Of a stretch of DNA of 64,000 nt, positions 25,427 through 61,043 are shown in pieces. Within the stretch, counting starts at the first letter, position 1; each line of letters starts with the position of its first letter. The translations under genes and the position numbers were made by a program. The notes beneath the pieces are model-generated. The model searched no databases. It was given only the letters and a program-made list of their open reading frames with translations, and was not told the origin of the DNA. Origin of the DNA: Mytilus californianus (taxonomy: Eukaryota); assembly GCF_021869535.1 (NCBI RefSeq), contig NW_026262581.1, forward strand, positions 80,476,001 to 80,540,000, written 5' to 3'.

Positions 25427-25518
25427 GGCTAGAGGTATAGGGGGAGGGTTGAGATCTCACAAAACATGTTTAACCCCGCTGCATTTTTGCGCCTGTCCCA
25501 AGTCAGGAGCCTCTGGCC
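25427..25518 (+). ncRNA. P5-type (circularly permuted) twister ribozyme fold; predicted cleavage U25471^A25472
   Basis: GGCUAGAGGU(P5)-AUAG-GGG(P2')-GAGGG-[palindromes]-U^AA-CCC(P2)-C-GC-U-GCAUUUUUGC(P3)-G-CCUG-UCCCAAGU-CAGG(P4)-A-GCCUCUGGCC(P5'). The core matches, position by position, the Oryza twister core as I recall it. Confidence 0.82.
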
Positions 25519-59131: not shown

Positions 59132-59744
59132 TTTACAAATGTTGCTGCATTTGTAGCTATCAAACTTGAAAGAAATATTTGCCTTGATCCGAAAAAAAAA
59201 ATCTAATCGACGTCTTGACAATATCTGACCTTTATGTACTGAAAAAAACAATTTAGGCGATGTTTTACAATAAAATACCTCGGTTTTTCAATTAAGTCAA
59301 AGCATCCCACCTTAAGTCAACCTCGAATCTCCCTTGTTATAAAAATAAGCAACAGTGGGAACCAGAAGAAACTATTGCATATTTCTGATCTCGAACAGCA
59401 ACATATCTTATGTAATTAAGCTCTTTCGTAACCGAAAGTTAAAGATATAACATATTTCAGAGTGGTGTAGTTTCTTGAAAAAAAAATGGTAAATTTAGAA
59501 AAAAAAATAAGTATGGCAAGTGAAAGTTTGTAGCACTCTTTGAATTGAGGAGCCAAACATACAGGGTCTCTAAATAAAAAAAGGATAGGAATACATAACA
59601 TAACACACACTTGAAACAGCAAAATGACAGAGCTTTCATTAAGGCCTGTTTAGTTAAATGTTTTTTGAATTGCTGTCTCATAATGTTTGCTCCTTTTAAC
59701 ACTTATCATAGATATTCAGTAATACATCTTTCATTTTAGTAGTT

Positions 59745-59955
59745 AGTCACCACTTCGGTGTTAACATGTATATCAGTTATATGGTCATTTTTATATTTTA
59801 TAAATTTACTGTTTGCAAAAAGATGAATTATTCTAAATACTTAATAATTTCTTATCCCAGGCAGATAACCTAGCCGTATTTGGCACAACTTTTTGGAAGT
59901 TTGGGTAATCAATGCTCTTCATCTTTAGTCCTGGCACCTTTGATAACTATTAGCT
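59745..59955 (+). mobile_element. Retrozyme monomer remnant with the hammerhead segment deleted
   Basis: TATTTGGCACAACTTTTTGG..CAATGCTCT joined directly to CCTGGCACCTTTGATAACT, skipping the hammerhead present at 37190-37231. Confidence 0.55.
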
Positions 59956-59969
59956 TGTCGTTATGTTCT

Positions 59970-60331
59970 ATTGTATTGTTTATTTGTGTGTTTCTCTGTC
60001 CTGTATGTTCTTCCATTTATTTGTATTCTAGTCCTGTCATGTAATGTTGTCATTTTAGTGTTATATTTAACATTGCCATTAAAGCGGGAGGTTTGGCTAG
60101 TCACAAACCCAGGTTCAACCTACCACTTTTTCTTAAAATGTCCTGTACCAAGTCAGGAAAATGGCTATTGTTATCTTTTAGTTCGTTTCTGTGTGTGTTG
60201 CATTTTAGTGTGTCTTTGTTCTCCTCTTATATTTGATGTGTTTCCCTCAGTTTTAGTTTGTAACCCGGATTTGTTTTTTCTCAATCGATTTATGAATTTC
60301 GAACAGCGGTATACTACTGTTGCCTTTATTT
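59970..60331 (+). mobile_element. Third, strongly diverged twister-bearing non-autonomous family
   Basis: No obvious flank similarity to the other families, but it contains the complete twister architecture (60075-60165). Confidence 0.7.
60075..60165 (+). ncRNA. P5-type twister ribozyme fold with compensatory pseudoknot changes; predicted cleavage 60116^60117
   Basis: GCCAUU(P5)..GG-GAGGU-[UGGCUAGUCA][AACCCAGGUU]-C^AA-CC-U-AC-C..CCUG-UACCAAGU-CAGG-AA-AAUGGC. GAGGU pairs with loop ACC; AC pairs with loop GU. Confidence 0.72.
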
Positions 60332-60505
60332 AATATCAATATACAAAAGAGTACGAAGATTATCGACTGTCTTGATGCCTTTGATTTGCAGATTTGCTTT
60401 TTCTGCAGTTTGTTTGGTATCCTTTATCGTATATTAAAAGATAAAAAATAAATACAGCACATCAGACAAAACCACTGTTTTAAAAACATTTGAATGCAGT
60501 TTAAA

Positions 60506-61043
60506 TAAAATTGAGAATGGAAATGGGGAATGTGTCAAAGAGACAACAACCCGACCATAGAGCAAACAACAGCCGAAGGCCACCCATGGGTCTTCAATGC
60601 AGCGAGAAACTCCCGCACCCGGAGGCGTCCTTCAGCTGGCCCCCAAACAAATATGTATACTAGTTCAGTGATAATGGACGTCATACTAAACTCCAAATTA
60701 TACACAAGAAACTAAAATTAAAAATGATACAAGACTAACAAAGGCCAGAGGCTCCTGACTTGGGACAGGCGCAAAAATGCGGCGCGGTTAAACATGTTTT
60801 TTGAGATCTCAACCCTCCCCCTATACCTCTAGCCAATGTAGAAAAACAAACGTACAACAGTACGCACAGTAAAACTCAGTTTAAGAGAAGTCCGAGTCCG
60901 ATGTCAGAATAGGAAATGAAAGAAAATAAAGAAAATGACAATACTAGTATTACATAAATAACAACAGACTACTAGCAGTTACTGACATGCCAGCTCCAGG
61001 CCTCAATTAAACTGATTGAAAGATTATGTCTTCATCATATGAA
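60506..61043 (-). mobile_element. 3'-region-only copy of the Naiad-type element (truncated inside the SECIS 3' arm)
   Basis: Reverse complement of ~25215-25753 with high similarity. Confidence 0.9.
60743..60833 (-). ncRNA. P5-type twister ribozyme fold, second copy of the Naiad family; predicted cleavage 60790^60789
   Basis: Minus strand GGCUAGAGGU-AUA-GGG-GAGGG-UUGAGAUCUCAA-AA-AACAUGUU-U^AA-CCG-C-GC-C-GCAUUUUUGC-G-CCUG-UCCCAAGU-CAGG-A-GCCUCUGGCC; one P2 mismatch. Confidence 0.8.

What the first reader, a model, noticed from the sequence alone, without database searches (positions are those of the whole stretch)
60075..60165. Diverged repeat family shows compensatory changes in both twister pseudoknots
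Seen: relative to the 25427-25518 copy, the L1 strand changes GAGGG to GAGGU while loop 4 changes UCCCAAGU to UACCAAGU (C-G becomes A-U in T1). The T2 dinucleotide changes GC to AC against loop GU (G-U becomes A-U). P5 is a different sequence (GCCAUU/AAUGGC), and both palindromes differ. Double covariation at tertiary contacts is unlikely in a neutral repeat, and it is the strongest internal evidence that the fold is functional. Caveat: the P2 segment is one nucleotide shorter than the reference core.
Basis: seen in the sequence. Interest (0 to 1): 0.8.

Follow-up and report, generated by a model that had tools for sequence, protein, structure and literature searches.

The report
Diverged twister ribozyme copy in a repeat
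This 91-base stretch is one slightly decayed copy of a very abundant mollusc-type repeat that carries a diverged twister self-cutting RNA. Its matched base changes at a tertiary contact are shared by about 11,700 copies, so the fold was kept by selection, but cutting itself is not shown.

Summary
Window 60075-60165 (+) has L1 GAGGU, loop UACCAAGU, T2 dinucleotide AC, a different P5 (GCCAUU/AAUGGC) and a P2 3' strand one base shorter than the 25427-25518 copy.

The changes are family-level, not private. Exact genome counts:
- GAGGU with UACC: 11,712, in at least four subfamilies.
- Discordant GAGGU/UCCC: 329.
- Discordant GAGGG/UACC: 183.
- Ancestral GAGGG/UCCC: 15,240.

A second, independent T1 compensation (GAAGG with UCCU) has 7,083 copies, against 491 and 448 for its single-change forms. 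A sporadic double change (GAGAG/UCUC) occurs 14 times.

On a covariance-model alignment of 30 held copies, 86% of cells pair (75% when shuffled, 37-43% when slid). P5, P3, the P2 pair next to L1, and two of three T1 pairs change on both sides. T2 changes on one side only (G-U to A-U).

Limits:
- Rfam finds no twister in this copy or in a majority-type copy.
- P1 is not canonical, and P2 is 3 bp with a bulge.
- RNA-seq reads cross the predicted cut site with no pile of ends.
- Genomic copies do not start at the site.

The scan had already noted twister covariation elsewhere in this genome (s1-302510, s1-302467). Verdict: a new variant of a known ribozyme class, with the fold under selection and catalysis unproven.

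The parts
59729..60332 (+). One copy of a ~604-bp non-autonomous interspersed repeat ('family c'). Copies have a fixed 3' end and variable 5' truncation, and the twister-like motif sits 347-437 nt into the element.
   Evidence: BLAST of L001 against 29 sister loci gives a common 3' end at L001 1792-1795 and 5' ends from 1190 to 1481. There were 2,120 first-look candidates; the 40 that were scored are 95-100% identical over the 161-base query. No tRNA head was found.
60075..60080 (+). P5 5' strand, GCCAUU.
   Evidence: It pairs 6/6 with 60160-60165. Sister family d has UGUCAUA/UAUGACA with two-sided changes at two pairs.
60084..60087 (+). P2 5' strand G(C)GG, with C60085 read as a bulge.
   Evidence: It pairs with 60119-60121. 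The pair next to L1 is G-C in family c, A-U in d and U-A in e (GC 16, AU 6, UA 1).
60088..60092 (+). L1 strand GAGGU. G60090, G60091 and U60092 form T1 with C60149, C60148 and A60147.
   Evidence: genome counts.
60093..60115 (+). Segment in the place of the P1 hairpin. It holds two self-complementary stretches (60094-60103 and about 60106-60115), both hit by private mutations in this copy (60101, 60108).
   Evidence: the majority letters appear. No canonical P1 pairing exists between the bases after L1 and those before the cleavage site (sequence inspection; folds).
60116..60118 (+). Predicted cleavage site C^AA, with the cut between 60116 and 60117.
   Evidence: Placed by position relative to L1, P2 and T2, as in the Rfam Twister-P5 alignment of the reference copy. 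Family d mostly has UAA. Cleavage is not shown.
60119..60121 (+). P2 3' strand CCU (family majority CCC), one base shorter than the reference CCCC.
   Evidence: reads show 60121 T>C.
60122..60123 (+). T2 dinucleotide AC, pairing with U60153 and G60152.
   Evidence: AU 21, GU 4; varies on one side only.
60124..60140 (+). P3 hairpin CACUUU/AAAAUG with one private mismatch (C60126; family majority U).
   Evidence: P3 has a different sequence but stays paired in every family: CGCA/UGCG, CACAU/AUGUG, UGCA/UGCA and CAUUUUCU/AGAAAAUG.
60142..60157 (+). P4 stem CCUG/CAGG with loop L4 UACCAAGU.
   Evidence: exact match to the motif; the only stretch alignable with families a and b.
60160..60165 (+). 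P5 3' strand AAUGGC.
25427..25518 (+). Reference copy (family a, tail of a Naiad-type element): GAGGG / UCCCAAGU / GC.
   Evidence: Rfam Twister-P5 RF02684 scores 23.2 bits, E 0.0042 on 181 bases, below the gathering score of 37.6.

Best explanation
Window 60075-60165 is a mildly decayed copy of a diverged type-P5 twister ribozyme motif. It lies inside a ~604-bp non-autonomous retroelement family that is 5'-truncated in the manner of target-primed reverse transcription.

The differences from the Naiad-tail twister were fixed in the common ancestor of two related repeat lineages (c and d). They are L1 G-to-U with loop C-to-A, T2 G-to-A, a new P5, a new P3, and a P2 shortened to 3 bp with a bulge. 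They were then copied about 11,700 times.

The T1 change restores a Watson-Crick pair. A different T1 pair was compensated independently in another abundant lineage (e). All amplified lineages keep P5, P3, P4, T1, T2 and the N^AA site while everything else diverges. From this I infer that the source elements were under selection to keep the twister tertiary fold.

The most likely use is self-cleavage of the element's transcript at C60116^A60117 (U^A in other lineages). This would be analogous to hammerhead ribozymes in other Penelope-like elements and in retrozymes.

Shown: the anatomy, the family-level status and the covariation. Inferred: selection. Not shown: catalysis and its role in the life cycle.
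For: - Anatomy at the stated coordinates.
- The reference copy hits Rfam Twister-P5.
- The 30 sister copies fetched (all but a few) share GAGGU, UACC and AC.
- Exact genome counts: GAGGU/UACC 11,712, GAGGU/UCCC 329, GAGGG/UACC 183, GAGGG/UCCC 15,240. Reversed-pattern controls were 0.
- Independent T1 compensation: GAAGG/UCCU 7,083 against single-change forms 491 and 448. The sporadic double GAGAG/UCUC occurs 14 times.
- Families c and a/b share only the P4 hairpin at the DNA level.
- Structural counts on 30 copies: 86.2% of cells paired against 75.3 +/- 0.8 when shuffled (0 of 500 shuffles reach it). 16 pairs change on both sides against 9.3. Covariation score 0.304 against 0.125. Slid controls give 37-43% paired.
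- Pseudoknots alone: 93.5% paired against 86.0 +/- 1.4 shuffled, and 11-39% when slid. The covariance model does not model pseudoknots, so these columns were not fitted to the structure.
- High-throughput assays of natural twisters report that imperfections in P1, P2 and P4 are tolerated, while those in pseudoknots and catalytic residues are not (PMC11662667). This matches which parts vary freely here and which are compensated.
Against: - Rfam gives no twister hit at E<=10 for this copy or for majority-type c and d copies.
- There is no canonical P1, and P2 is only 3 bp with a bulge.
- The fold is not thermodynamically distinctive for family c (z -0.35 for a majority-type copy, -1.46 for this copy). 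A nested alternative pairs L1 GGUU with AACC.
- RNA-seq from 4 runs shows modest two-orientation coverage. The same ~44 reads cross 60101-60126, and no pile of read ends sits at 60116/60117.
- Genomic copies beginning exactly at the predicted site are no more frequent than at a control position (4 against 2). Three of the four look like internal deletions.
- The T2 change is one-sided and CpG-type.
- Copies within a family are not independent. The T1 evidence therefore amounts to two events, and on the small held set 'pairs with change on both sides' for the pseudoknots alone is not significant (45 of 500 shuffles).
Confidence: 0.7

Rival explanations
1. The twister-like fold is kept by selection, but as a structured recognition element rather than as a working ribozyme. 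One example would be a handle by which the partner (Naiad-type) reverse transcriptase or endonuclease picks its template. Under this reading cleavage is absent, weak or incidental in families c and d.
For: - No footprint of cleavage in RNA reads or in genomic 5' ends.
- The retrotransposed copies evidently derive from RNAs that were not cut at the site, because full-length and randomly truncated copies dominate.
- P1 is missing and P2 is weakened.
- Non-autonomous elements commonly keep the part of the partner element that its enzyme recognises (general knowledge of SINE/LINE pairs).
Against: - All lineages keep the residues that matter for catalysis as well as for shape: the A after the scissile bond, the GA of L1 and the L4 bases.
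- The reference family matches the Rfam twister model.
- Published natural twisters tolerate exactly these imperfections (PMC11662667).
Confidence: 0.18
2. Neutral founder effect. The two T1 changes and the T2 change happened by chance in the master copy of a decaying repeat and were simply inherited. Nothing is selected.
For: - Within each family the copies are 92-97% identical, so thousands of copies count as one event.
- Sporadic copies carry every kind of single change.
- The T2 G-to-A is a CpG-type transition.
Against: - Two independent lineages each compensated a different T1 pair.
- No amplified lineage with an uncompensated T1 pair was seen apart from one local tandem array.
- Sporadic double changes occur at about 14 copies, close to the expectation from the single-change counts (491 x 448 / 15,240, about 14).
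- Only 3-4 of about 27 core positions differ between families a and c, and two of them are partners.
- P5, P3 and P2 also change on both sides, while the rest of the elements is unalignable.
Confidence: 0.07
3. The conserved structure is a plain long hairpin in which L1 GG(G)UU pairs with AACC(C) around the 'cleavage site'. On this reading there is no twister pseudoknot, and the L1 change tracks the one-base shortening of the CCCC run.
For: Minimum-free-energy folds of a, c and d copies all contain this nested pairing. The G-to-U change (or loss of a G) and the shorter CCC keep it intact.
Against: - It does not explain the loop change C-to-A in c and d, or C-to-U in e. These are complementary to the L1 changes only in the T1 register.
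- In family e the canonical P2 forms in the minimum-free-energy fold, and the changed L1 base has no partner in the hairpin.
Confidence: 0.05

Closest known systems
Type-P5 twister ribozyme (Rfam RF02684, clan CL00120; Roth et al. 2014 as cited in PMC8501958 and PMC11662667)
   Same: The order of elements is the same: P5, P2, L1 GAGGN, (P1), N^AA, P2', a 2-nt T2, optional P3, P4 with loop UNCCAAGN, A, P5'. Both pseudoknots can form, and the catalytic A and the L1 GA are present.
   Different: The Rfam model gives no hit. The T1 terminal pair is U-A instead of G-C and the T2 first pair is A-U. P2 is 3 bp with a bulge. There is no canonical P1 and two palindromes stand in its place. The base before the cut is C in family c.
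[quoted passage not shown]
   Same: A twister embedded in a highly repeated retroelement of a lophotrochozoan. The local sequence is very similar: GAGGG followed by UUGG, loop GUCCCAAGC, GC, and a long P3.
   Different: In S. mansoni the ribozyme is type P1, sits at the 5' end, and target-site duplications abut the cleavage site. Here it is type P5, internal or near the 3' end, and genomic copies do not start at the site.
Hammerhead ribozymes in Penelope-like elements and their non-autonomous derivatives, the retrozymes (PMC8557442; bioRxiv 10.64898/2026.07.22.740005)
   Same: A small self-cleaving RNA motif shared between an autonomous Penelope-like element and abundant short non-coding derivatives.
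   Different: The ribozyme class differs. Naiad elements were described as lacking canonical hammerheads, and that paper does not mention twister. No tandem or circular RNA form was seen here.

Membership tests
Twister ribozyme, type P5 (RF02684) | Scores at or above the Rfam gathering threshold (37.6 bits) | tested here: not met
   No hit at E<=10 for window 60040-60200 or for majority-type c and d copies in L003. The reference copy scores 23.2 bits.
Twister ribozyme, type P5 (RF02684) | P4 stem with conserved L4 loop (U C C C A A G C/U) | tested here: met
   CCUG-UACCAAGU-CAGG at 60142-60157. The one loop change (C to A) is compensated in L1.
Twister ribozyme, type P5 (RF02684) | T1 pseudoknot between L1 and L4 (3 Watson-Crick pairs) | tested here: met
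   G90-C149, G91-C148 and U92-A147. 93% of cells pair on 27 distinct copies, against 11-39% when slid. Two-sided changes occur at two of the three pairs.
Twister ribozyme, type P5 (RF02684) | T2 pseudoknot (2 pairs) between the dinucleotide after P2 and the end of L4 | tested here: met
   A122-U153 and C123-G152. 94% of cells pair, and the variation is one-sided only.
Twister ribozyme, type P5 (RF02684) | Cleavage site N^A followed by A, between P1 and P2 | tested here: met
   C60116^A60117 A60118 in the expected position. Other families have UAA.
Twister ribozyme, type P5 (RF02684) | P2 helix (4 bp in the Rfam consensus) | tested here: inconclusive
   Only G(C)GG/CC(C/U), that is 3 bp with a bulged base. 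The pair next to L1 covaries G-C / A-U / U-A. Such imperfections are reported as tolerated (PMC11662667).
Twister ribozyme, type P5 (RF02684) | P1 helix closing L1 and the cleavage site | tested here: not met
   The bases after L1 and before the site cannot pair. Two self-complementary stretches occupy the place. P1 is reported to be dispensable (PMC8501958, PMC11662667).
Twister ribozyme, type P5 (RF02684) | Site-specific self-cleavage | not testable with these tools
   Indirect looks gave no support. Reads span the site with no pile of ends, and there is no excess of genomic copies starting at the site.
Non-autonomous retroelement mobilised by a Penelope-like (Naiad) element | Short, non-coding, fixed 3' end with variable 5' truncation, high copy number, and a module shared with the autonomous element | tested here: inconclusive
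   Truncation pattern and copy number are met. The only module shared with the Naiad-tail copy is the twister core and a weak TTTTAGTTC stretch. The partner enzyme was not identified.

The most novel reading that the evidence does not exclude
The c and d lineage is a natural twister subtype that current models miss: U-A in T1, A-U in T2, a bulged 3-bp P2, and P1 replaced by two covarying palindromes. It may act only when two RNAs pair, or serve mainly as a template-recognition fold. Together with the a, b and e lineages it would form a twister-based counterpart of hammerhead retrozymes, with over 34,000 copies with intact T1 in one bivalve-type genome.
Probability: 0.25. Interest if true: 0.7.

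Novelty: new variant of a known kind. Interest (0 to 1): 0.5.

Why it matters
Twister ribozymes are common in some animal genomes, yet their biological role is documented in only one case (Perere-3 in Schistosoma).

Here, retroelement lineages in one genome act as a natural mutagenesis experiment. Three different states of the 3-bp T1 pseudoknot are each fixed in thousands of copies, and mismatched states occur only as sporadic decay. This shows that the tertiary fold matters for the propagation of these elements.

It also gives ready-made variants for testing (G-C, U-A and A-U at defined T1 pairs, a bulged P2, no P1). And it shows that model-based annotation with Rfam misses a large share of natural twisters. 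The finding does not yet show what the ribozyme does for the element.

Tried and rejected
- Rfam at gathering and permissive thresholds on the whole window found no twister. Only short-stretch scans recovered the reference family, and none recovered families c or d.
- A fuzzy regular-expression parse of the motif picked wrong registers and was dropped.
- MAFFT alignments shifted L1 or the P2 3' strand by one column between families. One alignment was spoiled by my own wrong coordinates. I therefore built a covariance model from c and d copies and re-aligned with it. Even so, P3 of family c stays one column out of register, so its pairing is under-counted.
Family e and most b subfamilies could only be read from the printed pattern matches, which lack the P2 5' strand and P5.
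- RNA evidence for cleavage: no support. Most reads lay only partly on the stretch because they come from other copies, so read ends are uninformative.
- No tRNA-like head in the element.
- The supplement of the high-throughput twister paper is not held. The P4-loop strings occur in no paper of the library.
- A third T1 compensation (middle pair) was looked for and not found: 14 sporadic copies.

Full report
**What is there**

Window 60075-60165 (+) reads as follows:
- P5 is GCCAUU (60075-80) paired with AAUGGC (60160-65).
- P2 is G(C)GG (60084-87) paired with CCU (60119-21).
- L1 is GAGGU (60088-92).
- A 23-nt segment (60093-60115) holds two self-complementary stretches in the place of P1.
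- C^AA lies at 60116-18.
- T2 is AC (60122-23).
- P3 is a hairpin at 60124-40.
- P4 is CCUG/CAGG with loop UACCAAGU (60142-57).
- An A follows, then the P5 3' strand.

The comparison copy 25427-25518 has GAGGG, UAA, CCCC, GC and loop UCCCAAGU. It is the only one of the two that Rfam recognises: Twister-P5 RF02684 at 23.2 bits, E 0.0042 on a 181-base scan, below the gathering score of 37.6. The target copy gives nothing at E<=10. A majority-type sister copy and a copy of the related family d also give nothing.

**Context**

The window lies in a 1.65-Gb genome and holds nine P4-loop motifs against 0.09 expected by chance. The target sits in a ~604-bp element (window 59729-60332). Its sister copies share a fixed 3' end and have variable 5' ends, as retrotransposed non-autonomous elements do. 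A 161-base query gave 2,120 first-look candidates; the 40 that were scored are 95-100% identical over that query. No tRNA-like head was found. At the DNA level this element shares only the 17-27-nt P4 hairpin with the elements that carry the reference-type motif.

**Family-level or private?**

The 30 sister loci share GAGGU, UACC and AC, with single changes in a few. The window copy differs from the majority at four places:
- 60101, in the first palindrome.
- 60108, in the second palindrome.
- 60121, where P2 CCC becomes CCU. This is still a wobble pair.
- 60126, which makes one mismatch in P3.

RNA reads from four runs show the majority base at each of these places. The core of this copy (L1, site, T2, P4/L4, T1, T2) is intact.

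**Genome-wide exact-pattern counts**

The pattern was L1 plus UU, then 30-60 nt, then the P4 hairpin. Reversed-pattern controls were always 0.

| L1 / loop | Count |
|---|---|
| GAGGG / UCCC | 15,240 |
| GAGGU / UACC | 11,712 |
| GAGGU / UCCC | 329 |
| GAGGG / UACC | 183 |

The discordant copies are scattered over all families, as expected for single mutations in decaying copies. The concordant GAGGU/UACC copies fall into at least four subfamilies, which differ in the palindromes and in P3.

**A second, independent event**

A further lineage (e) has L1 GAAGG with loop UCCU. This is G-C to A-U at a different T1 pair. It has 7,083 copies in at least two subfamilies. The single-change forms have 491 copies (GAAGG/UCCC) and 448 copies (GAGGG/UCCU), again scattered over families.

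The double change at the middle T1 pair (GAGAG/UCUC) occurs 14 times. That is about what independent single mutations predict: 491 x 448 / 15,240 is about 14. So two of the three T1 pairs were each compensated once in a lineage that went on to amplify. No amplified retrotransposed lineage with a broken T1 was seen. The only cluster of discordant copies is a local tandem array.

**Formal pair counts**

MAFFT shifted registers between families. I therefore built a covariance model from c and d copies with P5, P2, P3 and P4. I then aligned 30 hits at E<=0.001 from the held sequence and counted pairs with T1 and T2 added as pseudoknots:

| Measure | Observed | Shuffled | Shuffles reaching it |
|---|---|---|---|
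| Cells paired | 86.2% | 75.3 +/- 0.8% | 0 of 500 |
| Pairs changed on both sides | 16 | 9.3 +/- 1.6 | 0 of 500 |
| Covariation score | 0.304 | 0.125 | 0 of 500 |

Slid controls gave 37-43% paired. Per helix:
- P5: 6 of 7 pairs are two-sided.
- P3: 5 of 8 pairs are two-sided, under-counted because family c is one column out of register.
- P2: the pair next to L1 is GC 16, AU 6, UA 1.
- T1: 2 of 3 pairs are two-sided.
- T2: one-sided only.

For the pseudoknots alone, 93.5% of cells pair against 86.0 +/- 1.4 when shuffled and 11-39% when slid. The covariation score is 0.190 against 0.094 (0 of 500). The count of two-sided pairs (2 against 0.9) is reached by 45 of 500 shuffles on this small set. 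The model does not include pseudoknots, so these columns were not fitted to the structure.

**What this does and does not show**

Copies within a family are one event, so the T1 evidence is two events plus the absence of amplified broken lineages.

Only 3-4 of about 27 core positions differ between families a and c, and two of them are T1 partners. I estimate the chance of that at a few per cent per lineage (my own rough calculation, not a tool result). Two lineages make it about one in a thousand.

The T2 change is one-sided, and its G-to-A lies in a CpG of the ancestral CCCCGC, so it is weak evidence.

I therefore accept 'the fold was kept by selection in the source elements' and rate 'compensatory in both pseudoknots' as overstated.

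**Is it an active ribozyme?**

For:
- The A after the scissile bond and the GA of L1 are kept in all lineages.
- Large-scale assays report that natural twisters tolerate imperfections in P1, P2 and P4 but not in the pseudoknots or catalytic residues. P1 is reported as dispensable (PMC11662667; PMC8501958).

Against or neutral:
- There is no canonical P1, and P2 is 3 bp with a bulge.
- Thermodynamic folds are not distinctive for family c (z -0.35; this copy -1.46; d -3.08; a -1.89). They contain a competing nested pairing of L1 GGUU with AACC. That hairpin cannot explain the loop changes.
- In RNA-seq, coverage over the motif is 30-130x in both read orientations. The same ~44 reads cross 60101-60126, and no pile of ends lies at 60116/60117. 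Most reads lie only partly on the stretch, so this is a weak test.
- If 3' cleavage products were reverse-transcribed, copies should begin at the site. Copies whose five upstream bases all differ from the family number 4 at the site and 2 at a control position 6 nt downstream. Three of the four look like internal deletions.

Catalysis therefore remains an inference. An alternative role for the fold, such as template recognition by the partner enzyme, stays open.

**Comparison with what is known**

The motif works like a type-P5 twister and meets the loop, T1, T2 and site criteria. It fails the Rfam score and the P1 criterion. I file it as a variant, not as a model-defined member.

Local sequence resembles the S. 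mansoni twisters (GAGGG followed by UUGG, GC, long P3). Those sit at the 5' end of Perere-3 with target-site duplications at the cut.

Naiad elements were published as lacking canonical hammerheads, and that paper does not mention twister (PMC8557442). Neither does a 2026 preprint on retrozymes as derivatives of Penelope-like elements. Bivalves are listed among taxa with predicted twisters (PMC11662667). The P4-loop strings of these families occur in no paper of the library.

Earlier notes of this scan on the same genome already reported twister copies with covariation (s1-302510, s1-302467), the Naiad-tail twister, and the palindromes in this window (s1-328129, s1-328138, s1-328176). What I add to them is the genome-wide count tables, the independent e-lineage compensation, and the negative cleavage-footprint tests.

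**Housekeeping**

I built no consensus of an element and describe copies only by majority letters at single positions.

Noticed in passing
G000:C88:4287204-4290170 (printed): A local tandem array of at least 10 b-type twister copies, spaced about 138 or 277 bp apart. All carry the discordant GAGGG/UACC state. It is the only cluster of T1-mismatched copies seen, and it was amplified as DNA rather than by retrotransposition.
   Followed up: no
window 60094-60103 and sister families: The first self-complementary stretch after L1 differs between lineages but stays self-complementary: UGAGAUCUCA, UGGCUAGCCA, UGGCAUGCCA, UAGCUAGCUA, UAGCGCUA, UGGUACCA, GGCGCC, GGGAUCCC. The second does likewise: AACAUGUU, AACUAGUU, AACGUU, AACC(A)GGUU.
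   Followed up: partly
window 59744-59795 and 59871-59926: In runs X22-X24 these two blocks of the element's 5' part have 300-1,600x RNA depth with a strong read-orientation bias. A joint 59795>59871 (skipping 75 nt) is supported by up to 336 reads, and loose ends are consistent on both sides. Some abundant transcript or repeat variant shares just these blocks.
   Followed up: no
window 60743-60834 (-): A second reference-type (family a) twister copy lies about 400 bp downstream of the family-c element on the opposite strand. It has a private C-to-G change in its P2 3' strand (CCGC). RNA depth there is 600-900x, with no pile of ends at its predicted site 60790/60789.
   Followed up: partly
G000:C1:48319897, C87:1075595, C132:44566955: Recurrent internal deletion in family-c copies that joins CACAAAA directly to CCCACC. 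It removes the second palindrome and the cleavage site, and lies between short repeats of AAAACC.
   Followed up: no
Sequencing-run output: Word shares of 0.2-0.5 of the 604-bp element occur in runs labelled with four different organism codes. The family is therefore shared by several related species or labels.
   Followed up: no
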